Shown here: one piece after another, positions 10,026-30,543 of the stretch
Layout: every line of letters begins with the position of its first letter
Numbering within the stretch: the stretch's first letter is position 1
Assembly: GCF_963853765.1 (NCBI RefSeq)
Contig: NC_088856.1
Location: forward strand, 55,800,001-55,864,000
Length of the DNA: 64,000 bases
From: Magallana gigas
Taxonomy: Eukaryota
Reading direction: 5' to 3'
Notes under the pieces: generated by a model
Told to the model about the DNA's origin: nothing
The model's database searches: none
Seen by the model: the letters and a program-made list of their open reading frames with translations, nothing else
Translations under genes and position numbers: made by a program

Positions 10026-10751
10026 TTACTAGCGTCTTATTGGTAGAGAACTGTTTCGCACATCCTTGTTACGATATATTCTCCAACCTCGTGTCTCACT
10101 TTGTTGTTGATGATAAAGGAAAGCTCAGAAAAGTGAACACTTACTTATACAGGCACGTGTATTGACGGCACGACCTTTAATCCTCCCCCTCCCCTACTTC
10201 TTAAGCCACTCAGCACTATCCACACCTAGCGCCACCCATTAATTCCCCCAACCACCCCCCTCCCCCCCCCCCAAAAAAAAAAATAAACTCTCAAGGAGAT
10301 TGAGATTCAGTAAAGTAAGTTACTACAAAGGCATTTTATACCCCCCTCCTCCCCCCCCCCCCCACACACACACACACATATTAGTCACTGATCATAGGCG
10401 TAGGTGGAGGAGGTTTAAATAGCTATAGACATTTTTTTTCTTTCATTTACACACAAACTTATGAACCATATACATACATGAATCATTTACATCCATCATG
10501 CCCCTACCATACAGACAACACAAGTACTGGCAATAAATCTGAATTGTCAAAGTAAAAACACCCATATGATGAAACGTTTGAAAATTTTTGATATAATATT
10601 TAAAAAAATAAATAAATCCCTATTCTCTTTATTTAAACATTTAAGTTAGGTAAAAAAAATCTGTATTAGTTTTAGAATTCTAGCTCCTCTATAGCAATTG
10701 CCGTTATGGCTTCCCATACTGGACACTAGTGAGAGATATGCAGGTACTACA

Positions 10752-13700
10752 ATGGCTATGATTTCCGTGCGTTCTGGACTAGGTCTGTGGTGTATCATCC
10801 TGTCAGCAGGTTCAGTCACACTTACTTTACCCTTTACTCGCTTTAACTTGCAGACTTTTTAGGACAGACTCGTTCTTAAATTATAATTAATCTAAATATG
10901 TTTTTGTAAATGTTCATATGTTTGTGAACAATTTAAAGGAGCATGGTCACGTTTTTGGTCAATTTTTTTTCCAATTTTAATGTTAACTTTACAATGCTTT
11001 AGTAAGGTATTTTTAATAAACAACCAAAATTTGAGTGTCATTCGTTGAGTTATAAGCAAGTTACAGTTCTTACAATTCTTTACTATGTAAACAAAGCATT
11101 TATTTTGTTTACATTTTAAATGCTGAAGGAAAAATTCCAATTTCAAACCTAAAATGAATGTGTTAAACGTAAGAAACTGTTAATTCATGCTGAAAATTAA
11201 TAAGAAGATAACACATCAGCATGAACAAGATTTTTTACCGGTATATTAAACCTATGTAAACAAAAACAGGGCACGAGCCTTGTTTACATATCAAAGAATT
11301 ATGAGCTCTGTATCTTGCTTATTACTTAACGACTGACTCTCAAATTTCATTTGAACATTAGAAATGAATTTCTTAAGCATCTAAATAATAAAAACAGAAT
11401 TTGACCAAACTCGTGACCATGCCCCTTTAACATATAAACTAACTTAATATAAAAGTCCATTTATATGACTTCTCAATATATTTTAGATATTTCAGTGTAC
11501 TTTTTAAGTAACCCTTACGATTGAAAACGTTACCAGAAACACTGGTATTTACGGTTCACACCTACTGATTTTAGTAGTAAAGGATGTATAGACCAGAGCA
11601 CAGCGATAGCCACTGACCTATATATTGTTTGTAGTGACCACGGTTGAGGGGGCGTGTCCGGAGGGGTTTTTCCCGCATGGTGACTCTTGTTACTTCTTCT
11701 CCTCCAGCATGGAAGCTGACTGGATCGAGGCCGGGGTAATGTAAAATTACTGAGGAACGGTAACTCTGTAATATTGAGACCGAGGCCGGGATAATGTAAC
11801 GTTACTAATGAACGGTAACTCTGTAATATTAAAATAGAGGCGGGGGTAATGTAACGTTACTAATGAACGGTAACTCTGTAATATTAAGATCGAGGCCGGG
11901 ATGATGTAACGTTACTAAGAAACGGTAACTCTGTAATATTAAAATAGAGGCGGGGGTAATGTAACGTTACTAAGGAACGGTAACTCTGTAATATTGAGAT
12001 CGAGGCCGGGGTAATGTAACGTTACTAAGAAACACTAACTCTGTAATATTAAAATAGAGGCGGGGGTAATGTAACGTTACTAAGGAACGGTAACTCTGTA
12101 ATATTGAGATCGAGGCCGGGGTAATGTAACGTTACTAAGAAACGGTAACTCTGTAATATTAAGATCGAGGCCGGGGTAATGTAACGTTACTAATGAACGG
12201 TAACTCTGTAATATTAGAATAGAGGCGGGGGTAATGTAACGTTACTAAGGAACGGTAACTCTGTAATATTGAGATCGAGGCCGGGGTAATGTAACGTTAC
12301 TAAGAAACAGTAACTCTGTAATATTAAAATAGAGGCGGGGGTAATGTAACGTTACTAAGGAACGGTAACTCTGTACTATTAAGATCGAGGCCGGGATGAT
12401 GTAACGTTACTAAGAAACGGTAACTCTGTAATATTAAAATAGAGGCGGGGGTAATGTAACGTTACTAAGGAACGGTAACTCTGTAATATTGAGATCGAGG
12501 CCGGGGTAATGTAACGTTACTAAGAAACAGTAACTCTGTAATATTAAGATAGAGGCGGGGGTAATGTAACGTTACTAAGGAACGGTAACTCTGTAATATT
12601 GAGATCGAGGCCGGGGTAATGTAACGTTACTAATGAACGGTAACTCTGTAATATTGAGATCGAGGCCGGGGTAATGTAACGGTACTAAGGAACGGTTACT
12701 CTGAAATATTAAGATTTTACATCGAAGGGCAAACCCCTCTAACTGCTAATAAAGGACCTCGATATAAGAACTCTTCAGTGTATAGAATACAGTATGTCAT
12801 TAATACTCAGGTTTTACTCTACATGTACATTGAAGCAGGCACGGGCTTGGGTGATCAATAATTGAGGTTCAGAGCGACAGATTTTATGACCAAAATTCAT
12901 CCAATCAACGCATTAACGAAAAAAAATAAAGATAATTAGGATGTAATGCTAGGTAAAAATTTATTTCACTGATCTGAATTATCATCTTGGAGGAGAAACA
13001 GATAATTTTGACGTATTGCTCAACAAGTTGTCCTCTTTGCCCCTAGCTTTAATGGAAAATCGTCAAAACCGATTGTAGGTCAGAGGCACTGGAATGTAGG
13101 CGTAAATATACATGTACATACAGATAGCAAAAACAGTGACCTTATAGACGCGATTGAATGACTTCATGACATAGCTATAGGTTAAACTGTCGACAGCACA
13201 TATACAAATAAATGACGTATTTGTAGTATTAAACTTGTTGATTTGTTTGTCTTTTAATATTTTTTTTCTTTTTCAGTTTTTCTGTAACCGATTTAATGGG
13301 GGAGACTTAGTTGCCGTCGAATCGCATTCAGAAAACGAGTTTCTGTATCAAATACTACATTTTATGCGTTCAGATAGTAAGTACCTGTATAATACGATAA
13401 AGTTCATTGATTTTACGTCACGTTAATGACGTAGTGTTAAGACACACGCAGTGTTTGCATAATTATGCGAACTGAAAACAATGTAAAGAAGTTTACGAGA
13501 CTTTGGGCGTACAGATAATTTTTACGTTAATTTTCTAAATATGATATTTCATGCTGTGAACTATTATTAGACAAAGAAATCATCAAATTTTATAGCTTTA
13601 AAAATTGAATGTTTCCCATTACTTTACTGTCTGAAGGAGATTAATGTATACGTAGTGTAAAAAATGGCCGCGACCATTGAGCTTTCGTGGTGTTTTAAAA

Positions 13701-15914
13701 TAAAAAACAAATTGCTGAAAATATTATTAATATCAGTAATGAGGAACCTTTCTTTGGTTATCATGAGGTGTTCAAATACGTCGGGTGTAATCAAATACTA
13801 GTATATCATAAAGCCCTTTTGGGCATCAATTGATTTGATCACAAATATATCGTAAAGCCCTTTGGGCGTTAATTGATTTGATCACGCCCGATTGTTTTTG
13901 GTCACCTCAATATACACAACGAAGAATTCTTTATTTCTTAAATAATAATAAATAAATACCAGAAAAATGTTTTGGCAAAAAGAGGTACATATATTAATTT
14001 AAGTAATATCAGGAACAAATCGGTGTAAATTTTTATTTCATTTCTCTTAAGGGCAAACCTTAGCTATCATCTTCCTTTTATCTTAAAGCTTTTTATAATT
14101 AAAAAATACTAGATCTAGAAAACGGATACTTAAGTTATTCATAAGAAGATGGGGGAATAAGATGGCGCAAATGCCCATTCGGTTTAGTTGTGAAATACAA
14201 TTTTGAATTTATTTTTCCCTAATATTTATTCAAATATATCGTAATAAAACTTTGCAAAAGCAAAATTTCTAACTGTAGTCATTTTTAATATATTTAACAA
14301 AAAATAAGAAAAAAAATATTGTCGGAAATTTTGGTGGTATTGAACCCGTAACATAAAAACCCTTGAGATATAAGGTTAGCTTATGCCAGGTACTCTAACC
14401 ACTGAGCCATTTCAGACACAAAAAAGTGGGCTTTTTAAATATTATGTGTGACTAAGGCCACGAGTTACCGGACTTGGTATTATTTTTTCAAAACGTTGAA
14501 CAATTGTTGGGATACAAAATGATATTCTTAATGTATAGTGGGTCATCTCTCCACGTTTTTGTTGATTGAAATCGGTTTGTTTTCCAATAGACCTTAATTA
14601 GACTATGAAAAATATATGGAGCACAAACCCACTCTATAAAAGAAAATGCCCTGAAGTTCTAAAAAAATGACAGTATTTGCTGGTTTTGATACGTACACGC
14701 CTGTTTGAGTCAACATATTCCAAGTACTGAACACACCTATAGGTTGAAAATCAATGATTCGTTAAATATATATTGTTTTCAATGATTTAAAAAAAACATC
14801 AGATTTATTGATACTTTAATTTTTCAGTAGCCTGTCCGTCCGCGTATACGCATTTTACATGCCTTATCCACCCATCTTCAAATTTATATTTAACTTAGCG
14901 ATTGTGTTAAAAATCATTGGAATATATATTTCGAAAGAACTATCTCGATTTGAAATATTCATAATTCAGGTGCCTCTTTATTGCTTATTAGTTGGCGTCT
15001 AAACCAAATCGTTCATAATATTCAAATTTAACTTTATGTAGCATTGATATTACTATATAAACATCATGTATACATTCTATATCTATATAATTTAATATTG
15101 AAGTACTTTTCAGAGAGTTTTTGGATGGGCGGGACGGACGAGTTTGTTGAAGGTCACTGGATTTGGATCTCTACCATGGACAAAATGACCTTCACCGACT
15201 GGGGTCAAGGTTATCACGACGGCCACGGTTCTCACGAGGACTGTCTCCAGATCCAGGCGGGGGGTCGGTGGAAGGACGCCGTGTGCTCAGTCAGGTCCAA
15301 CTTCATCTGCGAGGTCCCGTACGTTTACATATAATTATAATAATTATATAGTTATAATAATATAAGTCATGGAATTACAAATTTATGAAATATATTCTTA
15401 AAGGAGACTGGTTGGTTAACAAATTAACCATCAGGTCTGTCTAAAATATTAAAATATGATTTCTACAGCTGTAAATTATTATTTAGAAAAGGAAAACTCC
15501 ACATATTTTACCTTTTAAAATTGGATATTTTCCTATAATTTTATACGGGACTCTCCTTCTAATGGAGATAAATACTATACACTCTAAAAATGGCCACGAC
15601 CATCGAGCCCTCGTAAATTTCTGACGGCCAGAGAATTTTATGGGTCCCTTTTTTCCAACAAATAAGGTCCAATATGCCTATACTTGGTAGTCTTTCAGGT
15701 GTGTTTTTTAAATCTGGCTTTCCGAGTAGATAATGGGGCTACACTTCACAACCCCATTCTAGCTGCAGGTCTTTTGAAGCTCTTGGTCTGAAAAAAAAAC
15801 CGTATGAAAACGGATGGGCGACCTGCATGGGAGTTTTTGGTTTTTTTGTTTTTTTTTAACTGTTTACAATTTTTCTGTTTCAGTGCGCTAGGTGGGCCCG
15901 ATATCGTTGGATGA
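10752..15914 (+). CDS. Secreted C-type lectin, perlucin-like, copy 1 (164 aa)
   Basis: Exons 10752-10809 (signal peptide MAMISVRSGLGLWCIILSA), 11635-11735 (CPEGFFPHGDSCYFFS...WIEAG), 13277-13376 (FCNRFNGGDLVAVESHSENEFL), 15114-15318 (FWMGGTD...EDC...WKDAVC...FICE), 15884-15914 (PALGGPDIVG*). Total 495 nt, in frame. Confidence 0.9.
10937..11426. mobile_element. TTAA-flanked MITE (~490 bp, Kolobok-like) in lectin 1 intron 1
   Basis: TTAA|aggagcatggtcacg ... cgtgaccatgcccct|TTAA. Confidence 0.8.
11722..12710 (+). repeat. 55-bp minisatellite (18 units) built from the lectin 1 exon 2 end plus splice donor
   Basis: Unit gatcgaggccggg|gtaatgtaacgttactaaggaacggtaactctgtaatattga; donor positions recur every 55 nt from 11736 to 12671. 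Confidence 0.95.
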
Positions 15915-16913
15915 TGTACATGATGATGTTGTTTACATATTGTTTATGTGACTCTGTACTTGTTTCCGAATATATCTATAAAGTTACACAGATGTTTGTG
16001 TTTATTCTACCAGCAACCTTTCATAAACTCTTCTGATGTACTTTATTCCTAGTAGCCGCTGGAAATGTTCAAATATTGTAAACCAACTATTATTTGCGAC
16101 GACTTTATTTCGCGATTTCCGCGAGATGAAATGGTTCACGGCGACCGGTTTGCGTGACCAAGCCTAATCCACACCTGTTTATTTTTTGTTTTTGGGGTTT
16201 TTTTTTCAGTACACCAATATGGCAAATACTGATCTGCGGCGAGAAATATTTGCGACAACAAGGCTTTCGCGAACCTCGCGAAAATTTCTTACAAGCGAAT
16301 AAGAGTACAGTATATGTCATAAAAATTCAGGTTTATTCAACAGTTACTGTAGTCCAACGTCTTTGCTTGTTTGATGGATATAAACATGAAATTTATTTAT
16401 CAATTTTCCCCTAAGAAAAAGGATTTTGAATTGATTATAGTGTATAATATAGCACTATAGTTGTTTCCTGTCGGGCTGTGGGTAACCGGTTCCATAGTAA
16501 CCGAGACAAAGATCTAGAATGGAAAAATTTCTATTAAAACTAATTTTTTTCATAATGTATTCTTTCCCTAACAATGAAAAGCCTAGTAAATTGTTCACAT
16601 TTCTCATAATAATACCCCAAATAAGTTTTGAATTCCTAACCTTACCCTGATTTATACAACATTATCGTTTGCGTGACCAAATCTAAGTCTGATGATAAAA
16701 GGTTGTTTGTAATTATAATCCTGTCATTGTACAATGTGGGGGGAAATGACTAGAAATGAAGTCTTTGCTTTTAAATGTCTTTTAAAGTATAGTTAACATA
16801 CTTCCAAAAGTAAGTACATGTACTTGGGTATAAATTCGTTATATACATGGATATTTACTAATGGCAGAGCTGTTCCTCCGTACTCAACAGATAAGACAAC
16901 ACTTACACTCACA

Positions 16914-19900
16914 ATGTGGCACCGAGTTCTGGTATTGTGGATAACTGGACTTATACAAGGTTCTGGGTATACGTCTTCTTACTTTATAGTGAGGTGTTCA
17001 TGCATTGTTTTCTACATCAGTACAACGACGCATATTTAAGAACAAAATGAATATCTTGTAAATTCCAAATTTGTGATAAGCAAACCCTAATCTAATTACA
17101 TGTAAAGTGAGATCGTTGATCCGCTCCTAATAGATCACTACACAAAGAAGCGATCTAATAGGAGCGGATCAAAGATCTAATTTTTATTAGATTGAAGCAT
17201 GCCCCGATACATCGTTGAACTTTTTAAAAATATTCAATTTCATAAAATGTCCAAATAGCAACATGGAAAATATTTTCTTATTATATAAGTAACTTATTAA
17301 TGTGTGTCGACACAATATCTGCATGTTGGAGCCCCTGACTCGGTACAAAGACAACTGATTATTTTTACAGATAGAAACGTGATTTACTGTATGTTTTATG
17401 TATACTAATAGATACAAAATTCTATTAATATGTAATAAGCCATAAAGTTATCGTAAAAAAGAATATGGTAGTTGAAAACAAACTTATGATAAGCTTATAT
17501 TTGATAAATAATTAAAGTGGGGATTGGATGTTTTCCTAAGTTAAAAAATTTCAAATTGTGATCAACAGTCCTACTATTATTATCAACTATTATCAGAAAA
17601 GTTGTACAATTGTTGTAAATAGCTAAACATGATTTGATCCTTATATTTCAAAGTAAAAATATTCTAAATTATCAAATAATCTTAATTTTCAATAATTCAA
17701 GGAATTTGATATGAGATAAACTCTCCAATGTGTTTTTCGTACAGCTTTTACGTTGGTGGTCTTAGTATTAAATCGCTGTACATTCAATTTCATTTAAAGT
17801 ATACACAGCACAAGAGGCGTGTCCTGAGGGATTTTTCCAACATGGGACCTCCTGTTATTTCTTCTCCTCCCACCTGGCGGCAGACTGGATCGAGGCGGGG
17901 GTAATGTAACGTTACCAAGGAACGGTAACTCTGTAATATACAGATCGAGGCGGGGGTAATGTAACGTTACTATGGAACGGTAACTCTGTAATATTGAGAT
18001 CGAGGCGGCGGTAATGTAACGTTACTATGGAACGGTAACTCTGTCATATTTAGATCGAGGCGGGGGTAATGTAACGTTACTAAGAAACGGTAACTCTGCC
18101 ATATTAGGATCGAGGCGGGGGTAATATACTAGTAATCTTACTAAGGAACGGTAACTCTGTGAATTAAAGTTAAATAAATGTAAAATCGTATATTTGAATC
18201 CGCTCTTTATCTAAAATCTATGTAAATTCTATGTATAAATCGGAGATCTTATTTTTGACGATTTTGATTAATTTTATCCAGTAGAACAAATATATTAAGC
18301 TCCCTTTAAAAGAGTTAGATGTAGGTTAAAGCAATATAAGCTGCAATTTTCATGTTGGATTTTTTTGGTGAAAATGTAACTAATTACTTTAGTATTACAT
18401 TGACCAAATTAAAGTATAATAACATTATGGTTTTCAAACTTCTGTACGTTATATTTCCTAGGGGGGAGCTATTTTTCAGGCACTGATTAAAGACAAATTA
18501 CATCACTGTCGTTCAGTACAAAAATTGCTTTGCTATATATATATATATATATATTCCATTATATAGGAATCTTTATCTTTATAAGATTTTAAAGATTTAT
18601 TTTCCACCTATTCATCACCTAGGTTCACCTAAACACAGAATTATCATCTTGGCTTGTCCAGGCAGCAAAATTAAATTCTCTAAAATACAGCTCATGATGT
18701 CGTACCAGGAATATACAATGTGTAATATCAAATAATACTAAATACATGTCTTTAGTGTTTGATATTTTAGAGTTTGCAATATTACCCTCACAAATCTTTC
18801 CCGATTTACCGAAACTGAAGCCCAAGAAATCAAGTTCATAATTTCTAAAGGCGGTCGTTTTACTATGATCCAATAATATATATTAAGCATAAAAAAAATA
18901 TATTAAGTAAGGATTAAGACTTTAATTTGTAAATAATTGCTAATTCATATCCTGATGTAATTTCTATTCCAGTCTTTCTGCAGAAGGTTCAATGGTGGAG
19001 ATCTTGTTGCCATAGAAACACAATCTGAAAACACGTTTATTTACCAGCAATTACTTTTGATGCATGATCATAGTAAGAGACTTTATGAATATAAATATAA
19101 AAGTCTACGGGTATTGTATTTAAAAAAATATTACTGGTCTCGTCCTTCAATGTTTAAGTTAGTTCAACTCCTTGCCATTCATAATCGCATACAATTGTGC
19201 CATCTCGCAATGTTTCTGCGTGAGGCAGGTAAAAAACGGGATGTCGGATAACTAGTACATCCAACTGATGTATTATTACTATCACTATTATTATTAATAT
19301 TACTATTATTATCATTATTATCATTATTATAATCATTTGATTTATTGATTTATAGGGTCTCTCCTCCTATGAATGTACATGTATGAATAATATTTTTTTA
19401 GAATATTGTTTAACGTCAATAGCGAACTGTTTGATTTTGATTGGATAGAGTGTAGCATTATATATTTATAATTATGTACATATGTTTCAACAGCTTATAA
19501 TTCATTTGAATTTAGCCAATAAACAATACAATGAATAATTTACATTATCAAGTCATCATTTGCTTTGTCCTCTATCACTAATTCCTCTATTGCTAAAAAT
19601 AGTCTCTTTTTATATAAACTGAAAAAAGAGAAAGATGCCATCTTGAATTTTTTTAAGTAATTTAATAGGCTTCAAATTTCACAAAATTTTGAGAACATAC
19701 AATAAAAAATAGGCATCGAAATTGATTTCGTATATATACCTTATTAAAGAACAACGTGACCTTTAATTCCGGAATCAAGCTCAAGCACACACCGATAATC
19801 GTGCATACAATCGTTGATACATCATATAAAGCACGCACACACCGATAATTGTGTACACATTCAACCAAGCACACACACCGATACTTCTTTTAACGTACTA

Positions 19901-22053
19901 AAATTCACAAGTCGATTATATATGCATATATATGTATACATCCTATCAAGCACACCTCGATTACTGTGTATGCATCCTTCCCTCACCAACTCTGTTCATT
20001 ATATAAATCTTGTATTATCATATATCTTCTTATATAGATAATTTCTGGATCGGAGGGACGGACGAGTTTGTAGAGGGACACTGGGTCTGGATTCCCACGA
20101 TGCAGAGGCTGGGCTTCACCGACTGGAGTCCGGGAAACCCCAGCGACAGCAGCTCCAACGAGGACTGCATGGAGATCATTGTGGGTCACTCGGCGCCGAC
20201 CACCCACTGGAACGACGACGACTGCTCCAAGAAAGCAAACTTCATCTGCGAAGTCCCGTATGTAAAGTAGATGAACGTTTTTGTTCAGACTACTTTATGT
20301 TTCATTAATATCCCAACACACTACAAGCATTGTTTTCATACTCAGTCGAGGAGCATATATATACTACAGTTTTAATATAACGCTTTATTTCATCTACACT
20401 ATTTCGATTCAGTGGGGCTTTTTAGGTCACCTGAGTAAACTCGGGTGCCCTATTGCTATCCGTTTTCGTCCGTCGTCGAGCGTCGTGCGACGTGCGCCGT
20501 GCGTTGTCCGTTGTGCGTTAATAATTTTACATTTTTAACTTTTTCTTAAAAACTACAAGGCTAATTGTTACCATTTTTGATGTGAGGCATCTCTATGGTA
20601 AGAGGAATCTAAATTGTAAAATGCATGGCTCTACCACCCCTAGGACGCTACAGGTGGGGCCAAATATGCAAAAAAAAGAGCCAAATTTTCAAAAATCTTC
20701 TTCTCTACTCCCACACATGTTAGGAAAAAACTGGTTGCATAGTTATAATGTCCATGAAGCCCTCTACATAAATTGTGAAATTCATGGCCCCTGGGTCAGG
20801 GGTACAGGCTCTAGGATGGGGCCAATATGGCCATAAAGTAAAAATGTATTAAATCTTAAAAACTCTTCTTCTCTACTCCCACACATGTGGGCAAAAAACT
20901 AAATAAATGGTTATGATGTCCACTAACTCCTCTACCTAAATTGTGAAATTCATGGCCCCTGGGTCATGGGTTCAGGACATGGTGAGGACAATATGGCCAT
21001 ATCGTAAAAATGTTTTAAATCTTCTCTACTCCCTTATATATTTGTTAAAAACAAAATGCATGATTATGATGTCCATGAGGCCATCTACCAAAATTGTGAA
21101 ATTCATGGCCCCTGGGTCAGGGGTTCAGGCTCTAGGGTGGGGCTAATATGACCATATAGTAAAAATGTATTAAGTCTTACAAAATCATCTTCTTTACTCC
21201 CATATATATTTTTTAAAAACTAAATGCCTGGTTTTAATGTCCATGAAGCCCTCTACCAAAATTGTGAAATTCATGACCTCTGTGTTAGGGGTTCAGGCTA
21301 TATGGTTGAGCCAATATGGCCATATTGTAAAAATGTTTTAAATCTTAAATTTTTTTCTTCTCTACTCCCACAATTACATGGTTATGATGTCCACCAACTC
21401 CTCTACTTAAATTGTGAAATTCATGGCCCCTGGGTCAGGGGTTCAAGACATGGAGGAGGGGGGGGGGACAATATGGCAATATAGTGTCAATGCATATAAT
21501 GTTTAAAAATCTTCTCTATTCTCACACGTCTGTATGAAAAACTGACTCCATTATTATGTTTACCACGAAGTCCTCTACTAAAATTTTAAATTTTATGTCC
21601 CCTGGAGTATGGGTTTTGACTTTAGGGCAGGGCCAAAATGGATGTATAGGTGTTAATGCATACAATGTATAAAAATTATCTTCTTTACTCCCACACACCT
21701 CAAAGGAAAATTGAATTCATGATTTTGTAGACCAGAGGTTTAAGATTTTCACCAAAATTATAGGTTCACAGTTCTTTTTGAAAGAATTCAGGCAGGTAGG
21801 TGGTCGTCATTACATATTTATAATTTTCTACTCCAAAATGAAACCTAATTTAATGCATACATGAGACTCGTTGACAAGTTTGTGTATGAGTTATATGCTT
21901 CTCAGGGGACCATTAAGGCCTATTGGCCTCTTGTTTATTGTTGCTATGATCTCAAATTTTAAAAAAAATACATATAGCGGAAGTACATCTTAAATTTCTG
22001 TACATTTTTGTTACAGGATGTTAGATGGTTCACCGATAAATGTAATTGGATGA
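16914..22053 (+). CDS. Secreted C-type lectin, perlucin-like, copy 2 (167 aa)
   Basis: Exons 16914-16959 (MWHRVLVLWITGLIQ; donor weaker), 17800-17900, 18973-19072, 20038-20257 (FWIGGTD...WSPGNPSD...EDC...WNDDDC...FICE), 22017-22053 (PMLDGSPINVIG*). Total 504 nt, in frame; exon 2 and 3 sizes identical to copy 1. Confidence 0.9.
17887..18160 (+). repeat. 55-bp exon-2/donor minisatellite (5 units) in lectin 2
   Basis: Donor-like gtaat at 17901, 17956, 18011, 18066, 18121. Confidence 0.9.
20419..21936 (+). mobile_element. Non-autonomous Helentron/HINE-type element with ~150-170-bp internal tandem repeats, in lectin 2 intron 4
   Basis: 5' tttttaggtcacctgag, a cgtcc/cgtcg microsatellite-like stretch, repeated aaattgtgaaattcatggcccctgggtcagggg units, 3' hairpin aggcctattggcct followed by cttgttt. 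Resembles oyster satellite-carrying HINEs (from recall). Confidence 0.8.
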
Positions 22054-23183
22054 TCTTGATGTTTGATGACAAGAAATAAATCATCGTCACGTGCACGTGG
22101 TCCATAAGATTGTTTGGTTGTTTTGTTTTGTTTGTTTGTTTTTTTAAATTTTTTATTTAATCATTTTTTGCGGGGGCGGTGAGGGTTTTGTACCAGTGAA
22201 AAAATATAGTAAAATGTAAGTATATATGACGTGTACTCAAGTGTATACGTACCATACATATTCATTTTTTTTCCAAAATTCGTTTTTATGATATGTGTTA
22301 CAATAATCTTAACAAAGGGAACTAATAACATCATCTACTGCTCGAAATCATGTGCAATGCTCAGAACACAAAAAAGTTGTTGTTTTAAGAAACTATATTA
22401 GCTGCACAAGTGTCTGTGACGTTTTGCGCTTATATTTTAAGGAAAACAGCTTTTGAAATAAAGGCTTTTAGAGTGTCAACATGTTTAATATTTAATGTTT
22501 TCACAATTGAATTATTAAACAGTTAACGGTGTCAAATTTAAAAAGGGTAATATTTCTTTAAAAAAAACCAAAAAAAACCCCCAAAACAGACTTCTTTTTA
22601 CTAAGCTTTTGCATGATTCTTTAGCTGGAAGTCAACTAAACCTTCTGATTTTTATTTCTACATTTTGCAGCCCTTCAGTGAATCTTGTAGATGTATGTGC
22701 ATTGTATGTGATGCTCAAAATGCTAAAAACAAAACTTTCTAAAGAGAACTCTGAAAAAATTCCAAAGTGTCCTCAAAATCATTTTCAAGGAAATTATCTA
22801 CTTTCTCAGAGTTTCTCTGAACCTTTAACAGGATCTAAAGAATATTAAGTCAAGTCAAAAGTTTCATTGCATTTAAAGTTTATATCATGTGATGTATTGA
22901 TATTAAAAACTGTATATATTGAAATAGTTTCAGGGTGTGTTTATATAGCTAGAGAGGAGAGTGGTGCGCTAATTAAATACATGTAATAACTACCTGTATA
23001 TAGTGAACATTACTAAATAAATGCATTATTTCATATTTGTACTAATATGTATCTTGTGTAGCACACGTTTATCTAAATATGTAGTGTTTGTGCTAACGTT
23101 TATGGAAATAAACTAGAAACAAAAAATGCGTTTATTCTATCCAATATTAAAATGGGGAATGTATGTACGTCAACTCAATAACA

Positions 23184-23325
23184 CTGGCCCCACCGTCACC
23201 AACTTTCCTCAAGTCAATACTCAGCTTCAAGTCTGAGTTTTACTTCATATTTATGCACTTCTTTCAATGATTTGGGCTGAGGACTGAATTAAGAGATTTG
23301 AAAATGTTGATGCCTGTGGGGCCTG
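23184..23325. mobile_element. ~140-bp MITE, same family as 4250-4394
   Basis: Begins ctggccccaccgtcaccaactttcctcaagtcaatactcag, the reverse complement of the 3' half of the 4250 copy. Confidence 0.7.
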
Positions 23326-24066
23326 TTCTTCATATTGACCTCTGGCAGACAGATAAGGAATCCATTTGCCATGATTGTTCGACACACTTCTTCTCCAAGG
23401 TAAAAGTACATGTATAAGGAGAAATTGCTTTTAGATGTTAATTAAAATCGCTGGATCCTCTTTATATATATTTATAACCCAATCTTTGTTTTTTTATTTC
23501 TCCTTCATCAATGGTCAACACGTCAGGCACGTAGCATCAAGGCAGGGGGGGGGGGGGGGCAGGAGGGGCGTAACCCTCCCCCCCACGTTTTTGCGCAGCA
23601 AAGATTTTTTTTAAATTTACATACAAAAAATTGAATTAAGATAGAGTTGGTCCCCCCCCCCCCCCCACTTTTCTGCGACCATGTAAAAATTGAATTGAGA
23701 GTAAGGTAATAAACAGTGAAATTGAAGTTAAAAGTATACCTACTGCCCCCCCCCCCCCCCTCCCACGGATTAGGATTTTCAGAATTTTGGAAAGAGGCAG
23801 GGATAATGTAACGACGTGTTAGAGGCAGGGGTAAGGTAACCATGTGATAGAATGAGGGGGTAATTTAACGACGTGATAAAGGCAGGGATAATGTAACGAC
23901 GTAATACAGACAGAGGTAATGTAACGACCTAATAGAGATAGGGGTAATGTTATGACGTGATAGAGACACGGTTAATGTTATGAGGTGATAGAGACAGGGG
24001 TAATGTAACCACGTGATAGAGGCAGGGATGATGTAAAGACGTGAGAGAGACAGGGGTAATGTAACC
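23323..24066 (+). pseudogene. Decayed fourth C-type lectin copy (exon 1 and exon 2 remnants)
   Basis: ctgttcttcatattgacctctggcagacagataaggaatccatttgccATGattgttc aligns with the region before lectin 3 exon 1 (from ~26017). The exon is only 29 nt (23371-23399), so it is frameshifted and lacks the hydrophobic core. At ~23786, tggaaagaggcaggg (W-K-E-A-G) matches the exon 2 end W-I-E-A-G. Confidence 0.65.
23793..24066 (+). repeat. 28-bp minisatellite (~10 units), half-length relative of the 55-bp donor repeat
   Basis: Unit agaggcaggggtaatgtaacgacgtgat. Confidence 0.85.
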
Positions 24067-24373
24067 AGCCTGTATGTAACCAGTAAGCTAGCCTGGTTCC
24101 TGTGCGTAATGGGTAGCTCAGGGAACCAGGCTAGCACACGTGAATCGGGATCGGGATTCCATGTCATATACACATATAAGTTCAAAGGCGCTGTAATTGT
24201 AAAGTTGTCGGTAAACAGTACAGAAACAGTGTATTCCTTTTAAATAAATGATTGGCAGGTGATATAAACTGTCAGTATTATGAAATAAGTTAATGTTATG
24301 CCGAAACTACAACATGCATCAAATAGCATAATTTGCAACGTTTCGTCGTTTTCCGAATACACATGTAGCTTAA

Positions 24374-25303
24374 GGTATCCCACTCCTCAATGTTGATGTA
24401 TCAAGATTTTCTTGAGAAGTATATCATTGAAATCTGTAGACAAAACAAACTTAAAAAATACAAAGATAATGGGGGATCAGTATCCATCCCTCTGAGTTAA
24501 GGCCCATTTAATTTGACTTTTTTGCACCTAAAATGCAATTTCATCCTGATTAGGATTTGTTGTCAGTATTTTTGATTAAGCAAACTTATTTCTTCAAATA
24601 TTGTTTTTAATTATACACAATGGTCACATTGAATAGAGGGATTACGAAAAAAAATTCTAAAAAGCTGCATAATTTTTTGTGTGACCTTTTTGCACTTAAA
24701 ATAGACAATTTCTTTAATAGTTACAATTGGATTTGAAATAAAAACTTTTTGAATATCAAGAATTTTATAAGATTAATCCAGTTTGCCTAAATATGTATTC
24801 ACTATCATTTTGACATAATATAACATGGGGGTCAGTGATGTCAAATTTTTGATATAGGGCTTCAAAGGTAAAATTCTCGCAAAATTTGGCTTTAAAAAAT
24901 TCAGACATGTTCTATATATATGCATGATTTTATGCTAAACGGCTATCACATTCTCAAGATTTGATTTTGTACATGTCACACAGAACCTATAAAATATGTT
25001 ACAAACCTATCAAATGTTAAAAATGGGAATAATGATTAAAGTATAATAAAAAGAAAAGTATATTGAAAATTCATAAAATGGCTTGTTTCTGTCATTTTTG
25101 TCTAAAAAACCTTCCGCACGAAAAAAGAGTTCCCCAAAAAACTTGTTTGTTTCTTGACTTCAAATGGATTTTCTTTATGAATGTTGTGTAATTATGAAAT
25201 AATAATCTATCTGTGATGATTAAATAAATAAAATCATATTCATTTTAAATACAGTATAATGATCATCTGCGCAATGAAATCAAAACATGAGGAGTGAGAT
25301 ACC
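24374..25303. mobile_element. TTAA-flanked non-autonomous DNA transposon (~930 bp, Kolobok-like)
   Basis: TTAA|ggtatcccactcctca ... tgaggagtgagatacc|TTAA. Confidence 0.8.
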
Positions 25304-25421
25304 TTAACTTTACTTTTATAGTAGGCGAGGCTAGACTTCCTGCCGATGAAAAGTTTTTAAGCATTTAAGTATGATGGAATAATTATTTGACTATATATAA
25401 TAGATGATTGGATAATTATGT

Positions 25422-25424
25422 CAT

Positions 25425-25458
<34 letters not shown>

Positions 25459-25571
25459 GAAGGATAATTGTGTTTGCCAGGGGGGGGGGGGGGGGGGTCC
25501 GAGGCCTATTTTCGCGATAATTTTACTATGTAAATTTAATAAATTTTCATTTTCCAGGGGGGGTCGGGACC

Positions 25572-25608
<37 letters not shown>
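25422..25608. mobile_element. G/C-tract MITE with 5-bp target-site duplication
   Basis: TIR catgcgcggatccag / ctagatccgcgcatg, flanked by tatgt on both sides. Confidence 0.8.
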
Positions 25609-25609
<1 letters not shown>

Positions 25610-25808
25610 ATGTCACTGTATAAAAGTTTAAATCTCAAGAAAAATGCATAATAATATGAAATTAATTTACACAAAGCTGTCGCTGCTTAGTTAATAAAGT
25701 AGTGCGAATCGTAATGTGTGCGCAAATAGTAGAATTCGCCGAATGCCTGCTTTCATGTTTCGTTGGAAACATATGCATATGGTCCACGTATTGCAGTCCT
25801 TTTTTAAA

Positions 25809-25941
25809 NNNNNNNNNNNNNNNNNNNNNNNNNNNNNNNNNNNNNNNNNNNNNNNNNNNNNNNNNNNNNNNNNNNNNNNNNNNNNNNNNNNNNNNNNNNN
25901 NNNNNNNNNNNNNNNNNNNNNNNNNNNNNNNNNNNNNNNNN
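25809..25941. other. Assembly gap (N run)
   Basis: 133 consecutive N. Confidence 0.99.
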
Positions 25942-26064
25942 TTATAATGGATTAAGACGCGAACAACATACATGTATGATTTGTTGGATTTTCCTTTCTA
26001 ATATTTGTCTGCAAAGCTGTTCTACATATTGACCTCTGGTAGAAAGATAAGAAATACATTTACC

Positions 26065-26133
26065 ATGATGATTGTTCAATATGCTAATGTCGTATTTTTG
26101 GCGATTCTCCTTCTCAAAGGTACATATAGTAGA

Positions 26134-26193
<60 letters not shown>

Positions 26194-29100
26194 ATTAAAT
26201 AACTAGCACAAACAATAGTTTTATACCGATAAGCCATCACCATAACCAACAAAGTAAAGAAATACATATAAAAAATTATATCTTAATTATTACCATTGCT
26301 CACTGCCAAAACTACATTGTTTTGGACATACGCAGCAGTTGTGTAACCGACGAATTTTATGGATTACAAAAAAAAATACCAATACAATTAAAAGACACAC
26401 TATATAAATAGTGCCTGTTTGGGAGGGTAACTGTTGAAATTGACACCCCGAGAAAACTATTGTCAACCGACGCGAAATGGAGGTTGACAATGGTTTTCGA
26501 GGGGTGTCAATTTCAACAGTTATCCTCCCAAACAGGCACTATTTATTTTATAATATTGAATGTCATATTTTCTGCTTTTATATAGAAATGAAGTGAATTC
26601 TACGGCGAACCGAACGCGCATAATTTACGCGTGTGTAACAATTCGTTGTGTTACCCGTTGTCAAGTGTGTTGCTTACGCTGAGGGTAATAGAACGGATTA
26701 ACATGAAAGTTTGATAAAAAATAATGTACCCACGATAAGTTTACCAACGAAGTTAAGTACCCACATAGCTGTGTATTTACAAATTTACAAGGTGATGCAC
26801 CCACAAGGTGATGCACCCACAAGGTAAATGTACCCACGAATAAATGTAACCACGAAGTAATGTGCCAAAAAAAGGTTATGCTTCAACAAATCAATGCACA
26901 TACAAAGTAAAGCACTCATAAAATTTCACCCAATATTAACTAAAGTACCAACAAATTATGTACCCATAGACTAATGCATACACAAAGAAATGTAACTTAC
27001 ATGTGCTACATCTTTTCACTTTTCCTGAAAACAAAATATATGAATTCATTCAGTACACGAGATCTGTATGTAAATTAATCCATGCTTTATCCAATAAATT
27101 CAGGATTTATACGTGTTCTGTCACTAAATACAAAGAAAAAATAAATTCATTAATTTTTCAAAATTGTGAAGTAATGCCGTAAAGTTTGGGTTAGAGTTTA
27201 ATAGTTTTTGTGGCTAAAGAAATATTTAAATAAAAAACGACTACATTGATAACAACACATGTGGTTTACTATCATTGGTTTCATATTGGTTTAATTGTTT
27301 TTGTCCTTGAGAAAAACGAGCTCAAAACATTTAATTAGATTTGTTTAATATTGCTGTTTATGGTTTATAGTAAACACGGCCCAGGAAGTGTGCCCTGAGG
27401 GTTTTATGAAGCACGGAGAGTCATGTTACTTCTTCTCCTCCCATCTGGCGGCAGACTGGATCGAGGCGGGGGTAATGTAACATTACTATGGAACGGTAAC
27501 TCTGTAATATTTAGATCGAGCAGGAGGTAATGTAACGTTACTAAGGAACCGTTACTAAAGAACGGTAACTCTGTTTTATTAAGATGGATGCGGAGGTAAT
27601 GTAGCGTTACTAAGGAACGGTAGCTCTGCAATATTCAGATCGAGGTGGAGGTAATATAACATAACTAACTTAAAGGAACGGTAACTATGTAATATTGAGA
27701 TCGAGGCAAAGATAATGTAACGTTACTAAGGAACAGTTACTCTGTCATATTTAGATCGAGGCGGGGGTAATGTAACGTTACTTAGGAACGGTAACTCTGT
27801 AAATATAAATATTTAATTCAAATCCACTATTAAAATTCTTTCAAACATGTAAATGTATTCATGTAATGATAAAAGCGTATTCTACATGTAACTACGTGTA
27901 TATTTTCATTATCAACATGAACGTTCAACCTGACTTTGATAATTTACTTTTGGATATCTATAAAAAAAAAATAAAACTATCAATGCTCGGACATGCATCA
28001 TTTTGGGTAAAAACAGGACTGCGTTCAAGATCGTAGCAGCTTTCCCAGCCGCTAGGTCGTAGATATTTAGGTCTATTGAACGGACGGCTCGGTTAGCCGC
28101 TATGTCTCAGATTTGAAGTTGGAAATATTTAACTAAAGACTAATAACATTAACATATTAATTTTTTAAAATCAAGTGGAAATGTAGATGTTAAAATTCAT
28201 TGTAACTCATAGGATGAACAAAATATCAGTAAATAAATAAATTTCATGTTTGTTACAAAGAGGTTACTATGGTGGCCATCTTGAATTTGATGCTTAACAT
28301 AAAATATTTAGGCTACGAATATCTACGTAGTGGCAAGGTTAGCTTATCGTTCAACAGCGTAGCTGCTACGTAGCCATACGCAGCAGCTCCGAACTTGAAA
28401 GCAACCCAGATCACATGTACTGAGTATAAGGTACATGTATATAAAATATATATGGTAATTAAATGCAATAATTATCGCATTCATACGAATGTCCACATGA
28501 TAAGAATTTGTTGATTTGATTTTGACAGTTTGTTATTGTCATTTTTTTCATTCATTACATGAAAAGTATTAATTTCCGGTTCAGTCTTTCTGCAAGAGAT
28601 TCAATGGAGGAGACCTTGTTGCCATACAGACGCAATCCGAGAACGAGTTTATATACCAGCATTTACTCTCTATACCCCAGCACCGTGACAGTAAGAGTTT
28701 ATATACCAGCATTTACTCTCTATACCCCAGCACCGTGACAGTAAGAGTTTATATACCAGCATTTACTCTCTATACCCCAGCACCGTGACAGTAAGAGTTT
28801 ATATACCAGCATTTAATCTCTATACCCCAGCACCGTGTCAGAACGAGTTTATATACCAGCATTTACTCTCTATACCCCAGCACCGTGACAGTAAGAGTTT
28901 ATATACCAGCATTTACTCTCTATACCCCAGCACCGTGACAGTAAGAACGAGTTTATATACCAGCATTTAATCTCTATACCCCAGCACCGTGTCAGTAAGA
29001 GTTTATATACCAGCATTTACTCTCTATACCCCAGCACCGTGACAGTAAGAGTTTATATACCAGCATTTACTCTCTATACCCCAGCACCGTGACAGTAAGA

Positions 29101-30543
29101 ACGAGTTTATATACCAGCATTTACTCTCTATACCCCAGCACCGTGACAGTAAGAGTTTATATACCAGCATTTACTCTCTATACCCCAGCACCGTGACAGT
29201 AAGAGTTTATATACCAGCATTTACTCTCTATACCCCAGCACCGTGACAGTAAGAGTTTATATACCAGCATTTACTCTCTGTACCCCAGCACCGTGACAGT
29301 AAGAACGAGTTTATATACCAGCATTTACTCTCTATACCCCAGCACCGTGACAGTAAGAGTTTATATACCAGCATTTACTCTCTATACCCCAGCACCGTGA
29401 CAGTAAGAACGAGTTTATATACCAGCATTTACTCTCTATACCCCAGCACCGTGACAGTAAGAGTTTATATACCAGCATTTACTCTCTATACCCCAGCACC
29501 GTGACAGTAAGAGTTTATATACCAGCATTTACTCTCTATACCCCAGCACCGTGACAGTAAGAGTTTATATACCAGCATTTACTCTCTATACCCCAGCACC
29601 GTGACAGTAAGAACGAGTTTATATACCATTTACTCTCTATACCCCAGCACCGTGACAGTAAGAATGAGTTTATATACCAGCATTTACTCTCTATACCCCA
29701 GCACCGTGACAGTAAGAGTTTATATACCAGCATTTACTCTCTATACCCCAGCACCGTGACAGTAAGAACTGTGTTTGTTTAACTGTTAAACCTGCGTGGA
29801 TGATACGCTATCTATAAAACAATGAGTGCTTGAACTTATATTGATGTTATTTGGCGTATAGATGATTTCTGGATCGGAGGGACGGACGAGTTTGTAGAGG
29901 GACACTGGGTCTGGATTTCCACGATGCAGAGGCTGGGCTTCACCGACTGGTACCCGGGGAACCCCAGCGACAGCGGCTCCAACGAGGATTGCTTGGAGAT
30001 CATGGTTGGCCTCTCGGCATCCCCGCGTCACTACTGGAACGATGAGGATTGTTCCAAGAAGGCCAACTTTATCTGCGAAGTCCCGTATGTTCATTCTAAC
30101 ACCATTTTTCCATACATGTTTCTGAAACGTTGCAACATGATTTCACTTTTGTTTGATTGCCAAATTAAATTCCAAAATTCAGGCTCAATCCAACGTCAGG
30201 CACATTGCATATCATGGTGGGAGTTATTATATCACTTTTTCGCAGAAAAGTTTTACTTATTTTACATACAGAAAATTAAATTGAAATATCATGAAGTTTG
30301 CTCTCCACTTTTTGGGAAGTAAAAAAAAGTGTAAATAAGAAAATTAACAATGAAATTTAAATTAATGGTTATTTGTGGTTTTTATGCTTGTCAAGATATT
30401 TTGGATGAGTCGCTCCCCTCTCAATAACGATGCTACGTGTCTGAAGGGTTTATTATCTTCAATATGAAACCCGCGTTTTTCTCAGACACCGTTTTTTTTT
30501 TTGCATTTGTTTCAGAATGTCAGAGGGTCTAATAGTTGGCTAA
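26065..30543 (+). CDS. Secreted C-type lectin, perlucin-like, copy 3 (170 aa)
   Basis: Exons 26065-26119 (MMIVQYANVVFLAILLLK), 27371-27471, 28585-28690, 29862-30084 (FWIGGTD...WYPGNPSD...WNDEDC...FICE), 30516-30543 (PMSEGLIVG*). Total 513 nt, in frame. Confidence 0.9.
26137..26191. repeat. (CT)n microsatellite
   Basis: Perfect dinucleotide run in lectin 3 intron 1. Confidence 0.97.
26406..26544. mobile_element. Long palindrome (~63-bp arms), core of a palindromic MITE
   Basis: aaatagtgcctgtttgggagggtaactgttgaaattgacacccc...ttgtcaacc / ggttgacaa...ggggtgtcaatttcaacagttatcctcccaaacaggcactattt. Confidence 0.75.
27458..27802 (+). repeat. 55-bp exon-2/donor minisatellite (~6 diverged units) in lectin 3
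   Basis: Donor-like positions at about 27472, 27527, 27596, 27651, 27712, 27767. Confidence 0.85.
28021..28403. mobile_element. ~380-bp TIR element in lectin 3 intron 2; inverted fragment at ~30965-31085
   Basis: Ends gcgttcaagatcgtagc / gctccgaacttgaaagc; the ttaggctacgaatatctac...cgtagctgctacgtagc block recurs reverse-complemented near 31000-31085. Confidence 0.55.
28641..29768 (+). repeat. 50/54-bp minisatellite (~22 units) built from the lectin 3 exon 3 end plus splice donor
   Basis: Unit gagtttatataccagcatttactctctataccccagcaccgtgaca|gtaa, with an optional gaac; nearly identical copies. Confidence 0.97.

What the first reader, a model, noticed from the sequence alone, without database searches (positions are those of the whole stretch)
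11722..27802. The same 55-bp exon-2/donor minisatellite sits in all three lectin paralogs, at 18, 5 and ~6 copies
Seen: the unit includes the exon's last codons (ATC GAG GCC/GCG GGG) and donor GTAATG, and the intron reads GTA ATG TAA, so use of any downstream donor introduces an immediate in-frame stop. The repeat persists although the signal-peptide exons and the other introns are not recognisably alignable. Copy 1 shows alternating gatcgaggccggg/aatagaggcgggg units (a 110-bp higher-order pattern). Inference: the array predates the duplications and is either retained by selection or homogenised by conversion; it may act as a splicing rheostat or an intronic enhancer (each unit holds the palindrome GTAACGTTAC).
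Basis: partly seen in the sequence, partly recalled or inferred. Interest (0 to 1): 0.7.

Follow-up and report, generated by a model that had tools for sequence, protein, structure and literature searches.

The report
Shared splice-donor minisatellite in oyster lectins
Three neighbouring Pacific-oyster lectin genes each carry a tandem repeat built from the end of exon 2 plus its splice signal; the repeat is real and limited to this oyster lineage, the sampled mRNA splices only from the first copy, and it is an oyster example of a repeat type already known from human genes such as F7.

Summary
There are 55-bp arrays at 11723-12715 (18 units), 17888-18167 (5) and 27459-27802 (6). Each starts with the last 13 nt of exon 2 of a C-type lectin (perlucin-like) gene of Magallana gigas, followed by the donor GTAATG. 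An in-frame TAA follows nearly every copy.

The unit occurs nowhere else in the 564-Mb genome. A degenerate 28-bp orphan array at 23793-24065 shares its first 24 nt.

RNA from three runs joins the first donor of paralog 1 (11735) to exon 3 (13277). No downstream donor is seen.

M. angulata has the arrays at 12, 8 and 6 copies. C. virginica (four genes, including a 1:1 ortholog of paralog 1), Ostrea edulis and Saccostrea cucullata (one syntenic gene each) have none.

Synonymous divergence between the paralogs is 0.75 to saturated, and their other introns do not align. The array consensuses nevertheless differ at only 1-3 of 42 intronic sites. Common descent alone cannot explain this, so exchange between arrays is the best explanation.

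I found no support for a splicing rheostat or an enhancer.

This kind of repeat is known from human F7, IFI6, CBS, LMNB2 and PDGF. The scan has already noted other donor minisatellites in this genome, in OvoA and in a GPCR gene. The assembly gap at 25809-25941 touches no array or exon.

The parts
10752..15914 (+). Lectin paralog 1 (RefSeq name: galactose-specific lectin nattectin-like, 164 aa). Exons 10752-10809, 11635-11735, 13277-13376, 15114-15318, 15884-15914.
   Evidence: RNA joints 10809|11635, 11735|13277 and 13376|15114. Exon 5 was placed from the M. angulata gene end. The translation equals the M. angulata product and is PF00059.
11723..12715 (+). Array 1: 18 units of 55 bp with no indels. 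Unit 1 holds the authentic exon-2 end and donor (GT at 11736-11737). 14 of the 17 downstream units keep GT. There is a 110-bp alternation of GATCGAGGCCGGG and AATAGAGGCGGGG units.
16914..22050 (+). Lectin paralog 2 (perlucin, XP_065939192.1, 167 aa). Exons 16914-16959, 17800-17900, 18973-19072, 20038-20257, 22017-22050.
   Evidence: Exact spliced mapping of P0020 on the window.
17888..18167 (+). Array 2: 5 units of 55 bp, the last one degenerate. The authentic donor GT is at 17901-17902.
23793..24065 (+). Orphan 28-bp array (9.7 copies) between paralogs 2 and 3. Its unit shares about 21-23 of its first 24 nt with the start of the 55-bp unit (GATAGAGGCRGGGGTAATGTAACG). No lectin exon lies beside it.
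   Evidence: The 20-mer GAGGCNGGGGTAATGTAACG with at most 1 mismatch occurs 22 times in this locus and once elsewhere in the genome. The 28-bp unit is unique to this site. There is no lectin exon between 22100 and 26000. It is conserved in M. angulata.
25809..25941 (.). Assembly gap (N run), 124 nt upstream of the paralog 3 start codon. It is not part of any array or exon.
26065..30540 (+). Lectin paralog 3 (perlucin, XP_065939193.1, 170 aa). Exons 26065-26119, 27371-27471, 28585-28690, 29862-30084, 30516-30540.
   Evidence: Exact spliced mapping of P0001.
27459..27802 (+). Array 3: 6 units (55, 69, 55, 61, 55, 55 bp), the most degenerate array. It is identical unit for unit in M. angulata. 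The authentic donor GT is at 27472-27473.
28645..29767 (+). A second, unrelated junction array in paralog 3: 22 units of 50 bp, made of the last 46 nt of exon 3 plus GTAA. 18 units are identical. M. angulata has 28 copies.
   Evidence: This is context only; it was filed by the scan as a separate finding.

Best explanation
**What it is.** This is a locus-specific splice-donor minisatellite (VNTR). A 55-bp segment (13 nt of exon 2 plus the first 42 nt of intron 2, bounded by a GAT microhomology) was duplicated in tandem at the exon 2/intron 2 junction of a perlucin-like C-type lectin gene.

**When and where it arose.** This happened in the Magallana lineage, after it separated from Crassostrea virginica. 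The intronic part of the unit comes from the ordinary single-copy intron start that C. virginica gene 2 still has.

**How it came to be in all three paralogs.** The array sits in all three tandem paralogs and, as a 28-bp derivative, at one intergenic site. Array sequence has been exchanged between the copies by ectopic (non-allelic) gene conversion or unequal exchange confined to the repeats. The arrays therefore stay almost identical, while the flanking exon is 73-80% identical and the rest of the introns cannot be aligned.

**How each array behaves.** Arrays 1 and 2 turn over quickly by slippage and unequal exchange, with 18 versus 12 and 5 versus 8 units between M. gigas and M. angulata. 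Array 3 is inert and decaying.

**Effect on splicing.** The spliceosome takes the first donor. The later identical donors are silent pseudo-sites, as in human F7 intron 7. Any transcript that used one would meet TAA three codons later and should be removed by nonsense-mediated decay.

**Shown versus inferred.** Shown: anatomy, uniqueness in the genome, taxon distribution, excess similarity and first-donor use in paralog 1. Inferred: direction and timing of the spread, the conversion mechanism, near-neutrality and decay of mis-spliced RNA.
For: **Locus-specific.** A 40-nt piece of the unit, allowing up to 3 mismatches, occurs 24 times in 564 Mb, all in the three arrays and none in the reversed control. 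BLAST with 165 bp found the same three places only.

**Taxon distribution.**
- M. angulata has arrays of 12.1, about 8 and 5.9 copies.
- C. virginica has four genes with no array.
- O. edulis and S. cucullata each have one syntenic gene with no array.

**Origin of the unit.** Exon ends and intron starts in the outgroups match it. Saccostrea reads GGCGGGG|gtaatataacgata. The start of intron 2 in C. virginica gene 2 aligns to the intronic part of the unit with score 31, reached by 0 of 2000 shuffles.

**Age of the paralogs.**
- Mg_P1 and Cv_P1 form a clade at 95/99.
- dS is about 1.6 for P1-P2, about 2.8 for P1-P3 (both saturated) and 0.75 for P2-P3. Between M. gigas and M. angulata orthologs it is 0.01-0.09.

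**Excess similarity of the arrays.**
- Array consensuses differ at 1-3 of 42 intronic sites.
- Units of different paralogs differ by as little as 1-2 of 55 nt.
- Exon 2 is 73-80% identical, and the introns give no blastn hit.

**Candidate exchange event.** Unit 2 of the M. angulata P1 array has its 42 intronic nt identical to unit 2 of the M. gigas P2 array. It is 3 differences from any P1 unit and is absent from M. gigas P1.

**Splicing.** The joint 11735|13277 appears in two contig runs (depth 53 and 22, 100 nt of exon 2 on one side) and in 3 raw reads of a third run. No joint from any later donor was listed. RefSeq models of P2 and P3 also use the first donor.

**Precedent.** PMC1557585 describes F7 IVS7 and lists IFI6, CBS, LMNB2 and PDGF.
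Against: - Gain-and-spread and old-origin-with-losses need similar numbers of events, so parsimony alone does not settle the timing.
- Only one assembly each of C. virginica, O. edulis and S. cucullata was examined. A VNTR can be polymorphic for presence.
- No other Magallana species could be examined.
- Conversion is inferred from excess similarity. The single candidate tract (Ma_P1 unit 2) could also arise from one recombination within the array plus one point mutation.
- Conversion that is limited to the array yet able to seed it in a paralog with little flanking intron homology is mechanistically awkward.
- The 78% identity of the C. virginica gene 2 intron start to the unit, despite saturated dS, hints that this intron-start element may itself be constrained.
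- RNA depth for paralog 1 is low, and nonsense-mediated decay would hide use of pseudo-donors.
Confidence: 0.6

Rival explanations
1. Old array, no function. The array formed in the single ancestral gene before all the duplications, was inherited by each paralog, collapsed back to one unit at least twice in the C. virginica lineage, and has been kept alike in Magallana by continuing conversion between arrays.
For: The arrays have identical outer boundaries in all three paralogs. Collapse of a minisatellite to one unit is easy and leaves a normal junction. Saccostrea and C. virginica gene 2 keep sequence homologous to the unit at the intron start. The event count is similar to that of the favoured scenario.
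Against: No array or partial repeat is present in any of six outgroup genes. The C. virginica ortholog of paralog 1 shows no trace of the unit at its intron start. This scenario still needs the same inter-array exchange as the favoured one.
Confidence: 0.2
2. Functional cassette. The array is kept by selection because its many U1-binding donor copies, or the GTAACGTTAC palindrome, tune splicing efficiency or act as an intronic enhancer of these immune lectins.
For: Similarity between the arrays far exceeds the neutral expectation. A related single-copy element is still recognisable in C. virginica gene 2 despite saturated dS. The donor GGUAAUG can pair with the downstream CGUUAC, and two units fold better than shuffles (z -2.3). 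Donor arrays recur in this genome (unchecked notes).
Against: Orthologs in four other genomes function without the array. Copy number differs freely between M. gigas and M. angulata (18/12 and 5/8). Array 3 carries indels and a lost donor and is not being repaired. No downstream donor use appears in RNA. The single-unit fold is not significant (z -1.3). There is no expression or reporter evidence.
Confidence: 0.12
3. Independent parallel origin in each paralog, or an assembly artefact.
For: Donor-junction arrays arise repeatedly in this genome; the exon-3 array of paralog 3 is an independent case.
Against: The arrays share the same 55-bp register, the same start and end points, a near-identical consensus and shared variants such as ACTATGG. 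They are present in an independent M. angulata assembly and partly covered by contigs of public runs.
Confidence: 0.03

Closest known systems
Human F7 intron 7 37-bp VNTR (Borensztajn et al. 2006, PMC1557585)
   Same: The first monomer spans the exon-intron boundary (4 nt of exon plus 33 nt of intron). The authentic donor is followed by identical pseudo-donors. Copy number is polymorphic (5-9). Only the most upstream donor is used, which the authors explain by 5'-to-3' scanning.
   Different: F7 is a single gene in one lineage. Here the same array sits in three paralogs that are old (dS 0.75 to saturated), plus an orphan site, and evolves in concert. The unit is 55 bp with 13 exonic nt. Every pseudo-donor is followed by an in-frame stop. 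No mutational test of the pseudo-sites has been done here.
Other human exon-boundary minisatellites listed in PMC1557585: IFI6 (6-16) intron 2, CBS intron 13, LMNB2, PDGF intron 4
   Same: All are tandem arrays that reiterate the donor. LMNB2 and PDGF use only the authentic site, as seen here for paralog 1.
   Different: IFI6 and CBS also use the first one or two pseudo-sites. No such use was seen here, at low depth. None of these is reported there as shared between paralogs.
Other donor minisatellites noted by this scan in the same genome (OvoA exon 8; a GPCR exon 2; lectin 3 exon 3)
   Same: All are built from an exon end plus its donor, repeated in tandem, and the first donor is used according to those notes.
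   Different: Those are single-gene arrays with unrelated units. I tested only the lectin-3 exon-3 array here. The others are unchecked notes.
Concerted evolution of tandem repeats by ectopic gene conversion or unequal exchange (general principle, established knowledge)
   Same: Repeats at separate loci stay more alike within a lineage than the age of the loci allows. Edge units are stable and interior units turn over.
   Different: It is usually described for rDNA, satellites or whole gene copies. Here the homogenised tract is an intronic minisatellite only, and it stops at the array boundary, while the adjoining coding exon diverges.

Membership tests
Exon-boundary (splice-donor) minisatellite, F7 IVS7 type | A tandem array whose first monomer spans the exon-intron boundary | tested here: met
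   The arrays start 13 nt before the ends of exon 2 at 11735, 17900 and 27471.
Exon-boundary (splice-donor) minisatellite, F7 IVS7 type | The donor sequence is reiterated in the downstream monomers | tested here: met
   GT is kept at the donor position in 14/17, 4/4 and 4/5 downstream units, mostly as the identical GGG|GTAATG.
Exon-boundary (splice-donor) minisatellite, F7 IVS7 type | Variable copy number | tested here: met
   M. gigas versus M. angulata: 18 versus 12, 5 versus 8, and 6 versus 6 units. Variation within a species was not tested.
Exon-boundary (splice-donor) minisatellite, F7 IVS7 type | Only the most upstream donor (or the first few) is used in mRNA | tested here: met
   For paralog 1, the joint 11735|13277 appears in three runs and no other donor joint is listed. 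This is low depth, and decay of mis-spliced RNA was not controlled. For paralogs 2 and 3 the evidence is the RefSeq models only.
Exon-boundary (splice-donor) minisatellite, F7 IVS7 type | Pseudo-donors are intrinsically functional but out-competed (shown by mutating the authentic site) | not testable with these tools
   This needs minigene mutagenesis, as in PMC1557585.
Concerted evolution by ectopic gene conversion | Paralogous tracts are much more similar than the neutral divergence of the paralogs | tested here: met
   1-3 differences in 42 intronic consensus sites, against dS of 0.75 to above 1.5 and introns that do not align.
Concerted evolution by ectopic gene conversion | An identifiable conversion tract with donor-specific variants inside the recipient | tested here: inconclusive
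   One candidate: M. angulata P1 unit 2 carries P2-type variants. Recombination within the array plus one mutation could mimic it.
C-type lectin domain genes (Pfam PF00059), perlucin-like | A CTLD encoded by the host genes | tested here: met
   PF00059 is precomputed for P0001, P0037 and the P0020 cluster. The CPEGF...CYFF...WxEAxxFC motifs are present.

The most novel reading that the evidence does not exclude
The 55-bp unit behaves as a self-propagating intronic cassette. It copies itself between paralogs and to an intergenic site. It is tolerated or favoured because arrays of decoy U1 sites, with donors that can be sequestered in a GGUAAUG/CGUUAC hairpin, set the output of immune lectin genes. 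Under this reading, the recurrence of exon-end/donor minisatellites in oysters (two independent ones in this small gene family, and others noted elsewhere in the genome) reflects a mutational process tied to splice junctions rather than chance.
Probability: 0.1. Interest if true: 0.75.

Novelty: new member of a known kind. Interest (0 to 1): 0.4.

Why it matters
The element belongs to a class already described in human genes, so its existence is not a surprise. The case is useful for three reasons.

1. One donor minisatellite is shared by three paralogs whose synonymous sites are saturated. This gives a clean natural example of concerted evolution confined to an intronic repeat.

2. It offers natural alleles with 5 to 18 identical pseudo-donors. 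These could test, outside mammals, the rule that the first of several identical 5' splice sites wins.

3. With the unrelated exon-3 array in paralog 3 and other arrays noted in this genome, it raises a testable question: do oysters make junction-spanning minisatellites more often than chance predicts?

For annotation, these arrays are traps. A wrong donor choice truncates the lectin.

Tried and rejected
- **Dispersed repeat or transposon origin: rejected.** The unit is unique to the locus. About 35 genome-wide hits to a 20-mer at 2 mismatches belong to several unrelated repeat families that share only GGAGGCGTGGGTAATGTAA.
- **A fourth lectin gene or pseudo-exon next to the 28-bp array:** none found by tblastn at E<1.
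- **Recent conversion covering exon 2: rejected.** Exon 2 is only 73-80% identical, and differences run up to 8 nt before the array.
- **CpG-decay signature among unit variants:** no clear enrichment, with 11 of 57 variants at 8 of 55 sites.
The corrected 40-aa query found nothing. No conclusion can be drawn from this.
- **Loci for Ostrea and Saccostrea isoform X2 and for P0012 were not on record**. I solved this through isoform X1 and P0039.
- **Literature search for oyster lectin minisatellites:** nothing relevant.
- **RNA structure.** The single-unit hairpin is not significant (z -1.3). The outgroup intron starts have z near 0.
Full report
**Observation.** Tandem Repeats Finder on the window reports three period-55 arrays.

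| Array | Coordinates | Copies | Matches | Indels |
|---|---|---|---|---|
| 1 | 11723-12715 | 18.1 | 89% | none |
| 2 | 17888-18167 | 5.0 | not recorded | not recorded |
| 3 | 27459-27802 | 5.9 | 67% | 12% |

Reading the sequence shows that each array starts with G ATC GAG GCS GGG followed by GTAATGTAACGTTAC... The coding context upstream is CPEGFF..CYFFSS...DWIEAG, the beginning of a C-type lectin domain.

Mean unit identity is 0.894 at lag 1, 0.936 at lag 2 and 0.954 at lag 9.

The only N run (25809-25941) lies between genes 2 and 3, 124 nt upstream of the gene 3 start codon. No array, exon or frame depends on it. I neither filled it nor looked it up.

**Gene models and organism.** A protein search with the last large exon and cluster look-ups identify the genes as follows.

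| Paralog | RefSeq name and accession |
|---|---|
| P1 | galactose-specific lectin nattectin-like, XP_065939194.1 |
| P2 | perlucin, XP_065939192.1 |
| P3 | perlucin, XP_065939193.1 |

All are Magallana gigas proteins and all carry PF00059. The P2 and P3 proteins map exactly on the window as five exons each. P1 was built from RNA joints and from the M. angulata gene end.

Exon 2 is always 101 nt and ends at 11735, 17900 and 27471. Intron 2 is phase 0, so read-through gives GTA ATG TAA. The in-frame TAA is kept in 18/18, 4/5 and 5/6 units. GT at the donor position is kept in 15/18, 5/5 and 5/6 units.

**Is it a dispersed repeat?** No. A 40-nt piece of the unit, allowing up to 3 mismatches, occurs 24 times in the 564-Mb genome, all inside the three arrays, with zero hits for the reversed control. 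BLAST with three units found the same three places.

A 20-mer spanning the exon end and donor, at no more than 1 mismatch, occurs 22 times in this locus and once elsewhere. Hits at 2 mismatches come from several unrelated repeat families that share only GGAGGCGTGGGTAATGTAA.

One extra member turned up. A 28-bp array at 23793-24065 (9.7 copies) has a unit that matches the first 24 nt of the 55-bp unit almost perfectly. It is unique in the genome, has no lectin exon nearby and is conserved in M. angulata. I read it as an orphan derivative of the same array.

**RNA.** I laid two contig runs and two raw poly(A) runs on 10100-15600. The joints found were 10809|11635, 11735|13277 and 13376|15114, all GT..AG.

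The 11735|13277 joint uses the first donor. It is carried by:
- a 556-nt contig with 100 nt of unique exon 2 on one side (depth 53);
- a second run's contig (depth 22);
- 3 raw reads of a third run.

No joint from any of the 14 intact downstream donors was listed.

There are limits to this evidence. Paralog 1 is weakly expressed in the raw-read runs. Contigs drop rare forms. Transcripts with a premature stop would be degraded. Low depth over the array and the intron (about 2-18 versus 29-53 on exons) looks like pre-mRNA or DNA carry-over. For P2 and P3 the only evidence is that the RefSeq models use the first donor.

**Relatives.** The look-up of encoding contigs returned the syntenic loci listed below.

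| Species | Locus | Lectin genes at this position | 55-bp array |
|---|---|---|---|
| M. angulata | L037 | three | 12.1, about 8 and 5.9 units |
| C. virginica | L048 and L036 | four, plus a P1-like pseudogene fragment | none |
| O. edulis | L038 | one | none |
| S. cucullata | L039 | one | none |

- In M. angulata the gene order is the same: a Spec3/FYVE gene followed by three lectins. The edge units of each array are conserved, the interior units vary, and array 3 is identical unit for unit.
- In C. virginica the first gene after Spec3/FYVE is the P1-type gene.
- In O. edulis and S. cucullata the single lectin lies between the VWA and Spec3 genes and the TMEM186-ALG13 pair. In the window, that pair follows P3.
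- Outgroup junctions read GGCGGGG|gtaatataacgata (Saccostrea) and AGCTGGG|gtaaagtcctgataacgtgttgttac... (C. virginica).
- The intronic part of the unit aligns to the start of intron 2 in C. virginica gene 2 with a score reached by 0 of 2000 shuffles.

The unit is therefore the ordinary ancestral exon end plus intron start, multiplied only in Magallana.

**Age of the paralogs versus similarity of the arrays.** In a maximum-likelihood tree of exons 2-4, Mg_P1 groups with the C. virginica P1-type gene (95/99). The three other C. virginica genes form their own clade (100/99). The P1 duplication therefore predates the Crassostrea/Magallana split.

| Pair | dS |
|---|---|
| P1-P2 | about 1.6 (saturated) |
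| P1-P3 | about 2.8 (saturated) |
| P2-P3 | 0.75 |
| M. gigas versus M. angulata orthologs | 0.01-0.09 |

Exon 2 is 73-80% identical between the paralogs and exon 1 is 45-57% identical. blastn finds no similarity in the introns outside the arrays.

In contrast, the array consensuses differ at only 1-3 of 42 intronic positions. Units differ from their own array consensus by 5-13%. Units in different paralogs can differ by 1-2 of 55 nt.

With interior turnover demonstrably going on, an isolated array's consensus should drift at the neutral rate. Near-identity across paralogs this old therefore cannot be simple inheritance. Either array sequence moves between paralogs, or nearly every position is under selection.

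**Conversion versus selection.** Several observations favour exchange:
- Homogeneity stops exactly at the array boundary. Exon 2 differs up to 8 nt before the array.
- Copy number is free to vary between the two species.
- Array 3 has 14-nt and 6-nt insertions and a lost GT, and it is static between the two species.
- Four other genomes do without the array.
- One unit in the M. angulata P1 array has its intronic 42 nt identical to a P2 unit. It is 3 differences from any P1 unit and is missing from M. gigas P1.

Two observations favour some constraint:
- The intron-start element is still 78% identical between the C. virginica gene 2 intron and the unit, despite saturated dS.
- The donor can pair with the downstream CGUUAC. 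However, one unit does not fold better than shuffles (z -1.3), two units give z -2.3, and the outgroup intron starts give z near 0.

I put about 0.6 on a Magallana-specific origin with spread and homogenisation by ectopic exchange. I put 0.2 on an older origin with losses plus the same exchange, and about 0.12 on a selected function.

**Comparison with what is known.** Borensztajn et al. 2006 (PMC1557585) describe exactly this architecture in human F7 intron 7. It is a 37-bp VNTR whose first monomer spans the exon boundary, with 5-9 copies and pseudo-donors identical to the authentic one. Only the most upstream site is used, which the authors attribute to 5'-to-3' scanning.

Their introduction lists further cases: IFI6 (25 pseudo-sites, the first two used), CBS, LMNB2 and PDGF. 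The oyster arrays meet the defining features I could test. These are a boundary-spanning first unit, reiterated donors, variable copy number and first-donor use in P1.

The scan itself has noted donor minisatellites elsewhere in this genome, in OvoA and in a GPCR gene (unchecked by me). Paralog 3 carries a second, unrelated 50-bp array made of its exon 3 end plus donor. That array has 22 copies here and 28 in M. angulata, and it is unique in the genome.

**Verdict.** 'Predates the duplications' is not supported for the oldest duplication and is unproven for the younger one. The rheostat and enhancer ideas have no support so far.

It is a new member of a known kind of element. Its modest extra interest lies in one intronic minisatellite evolving in concert across three old paralogs, and in the apparent recurrence of junction-spanning arrays in oysters.

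Noticed in passing
window 28645-29767: Paralog 3 has a second, unrelated junction minisatellite: 22 units of 50 bp made of the last 46 nt of exon 3 plus GTAA. 18 units are identical. M. angulata has 28 copies, and the unit is unique in the genome. Use of a later donor would shift the frame (50 nt) and reach a TGA.
   Followed up: partly
window 23793-24065: An orphan 28-bp array whose unit matches the first 24 nt of the 55-bp unit (exon end plus donor). It is intergenic, has no lectin exon nearby and is conserved in M. angulata.
   Followed up: partly
G000 C1, C2, C5, C6, C8, C9 (e.g. L041-L047): Several unrelated dispersed repeat families share a 19-nt core GGAGGCGTGGGTAATGTAA, usually a few bases after a short GC-rich hairpin. 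Its meaning is unknown. It resembles the lectin exon end and donor only by this short core.
   Followed up: partly
L036:8440-9245 (C. virginica): A P1-like lectin pseudogene fragment lies between the intact P1-type gene and gene 1 of C. virginica. It has exon 3 with disruptions, the 3' half of exon 4 and exon 5.
   Followed up: partly
window 11020-11571 and 14148-14883: Intronic stretches of paralog 1 have very high RNA depth (hundreds to thousands) from reads that fit only partly. They are probably copies of transposable elements expressed elsewhere.
   Followed up: no
window 16914-22050 versus L037:10001-13436: Paralog 2 shows a higher synonymous divergence between M. gigas and M. angulata (dS 0.094) than paralogs 1 and 3 (0.01-0.02). 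This could reflect deep allelic lineages or conversion.
   Followed up: no
each 55-bp unit, e.g. window 12053-12107: Each unit also holds a branch-point-like TACTAAG about 25 nt before an AG that precedes ATCGAGGCSGGG. In principle each unit could be a 12-nt in-frame micro-exon (IEAG) flanked by splice signals. No RNA support was seen.
   Followed up: no
window 13802-13885 versus L037:6552-6854: A 43-bp intronic repeat in paralog 1 intron 3 has 1.9 copies in M. gigas and 7.0 in M. angulata. This is another fast-changing minisatellite in the same gene.
   Followed up: no
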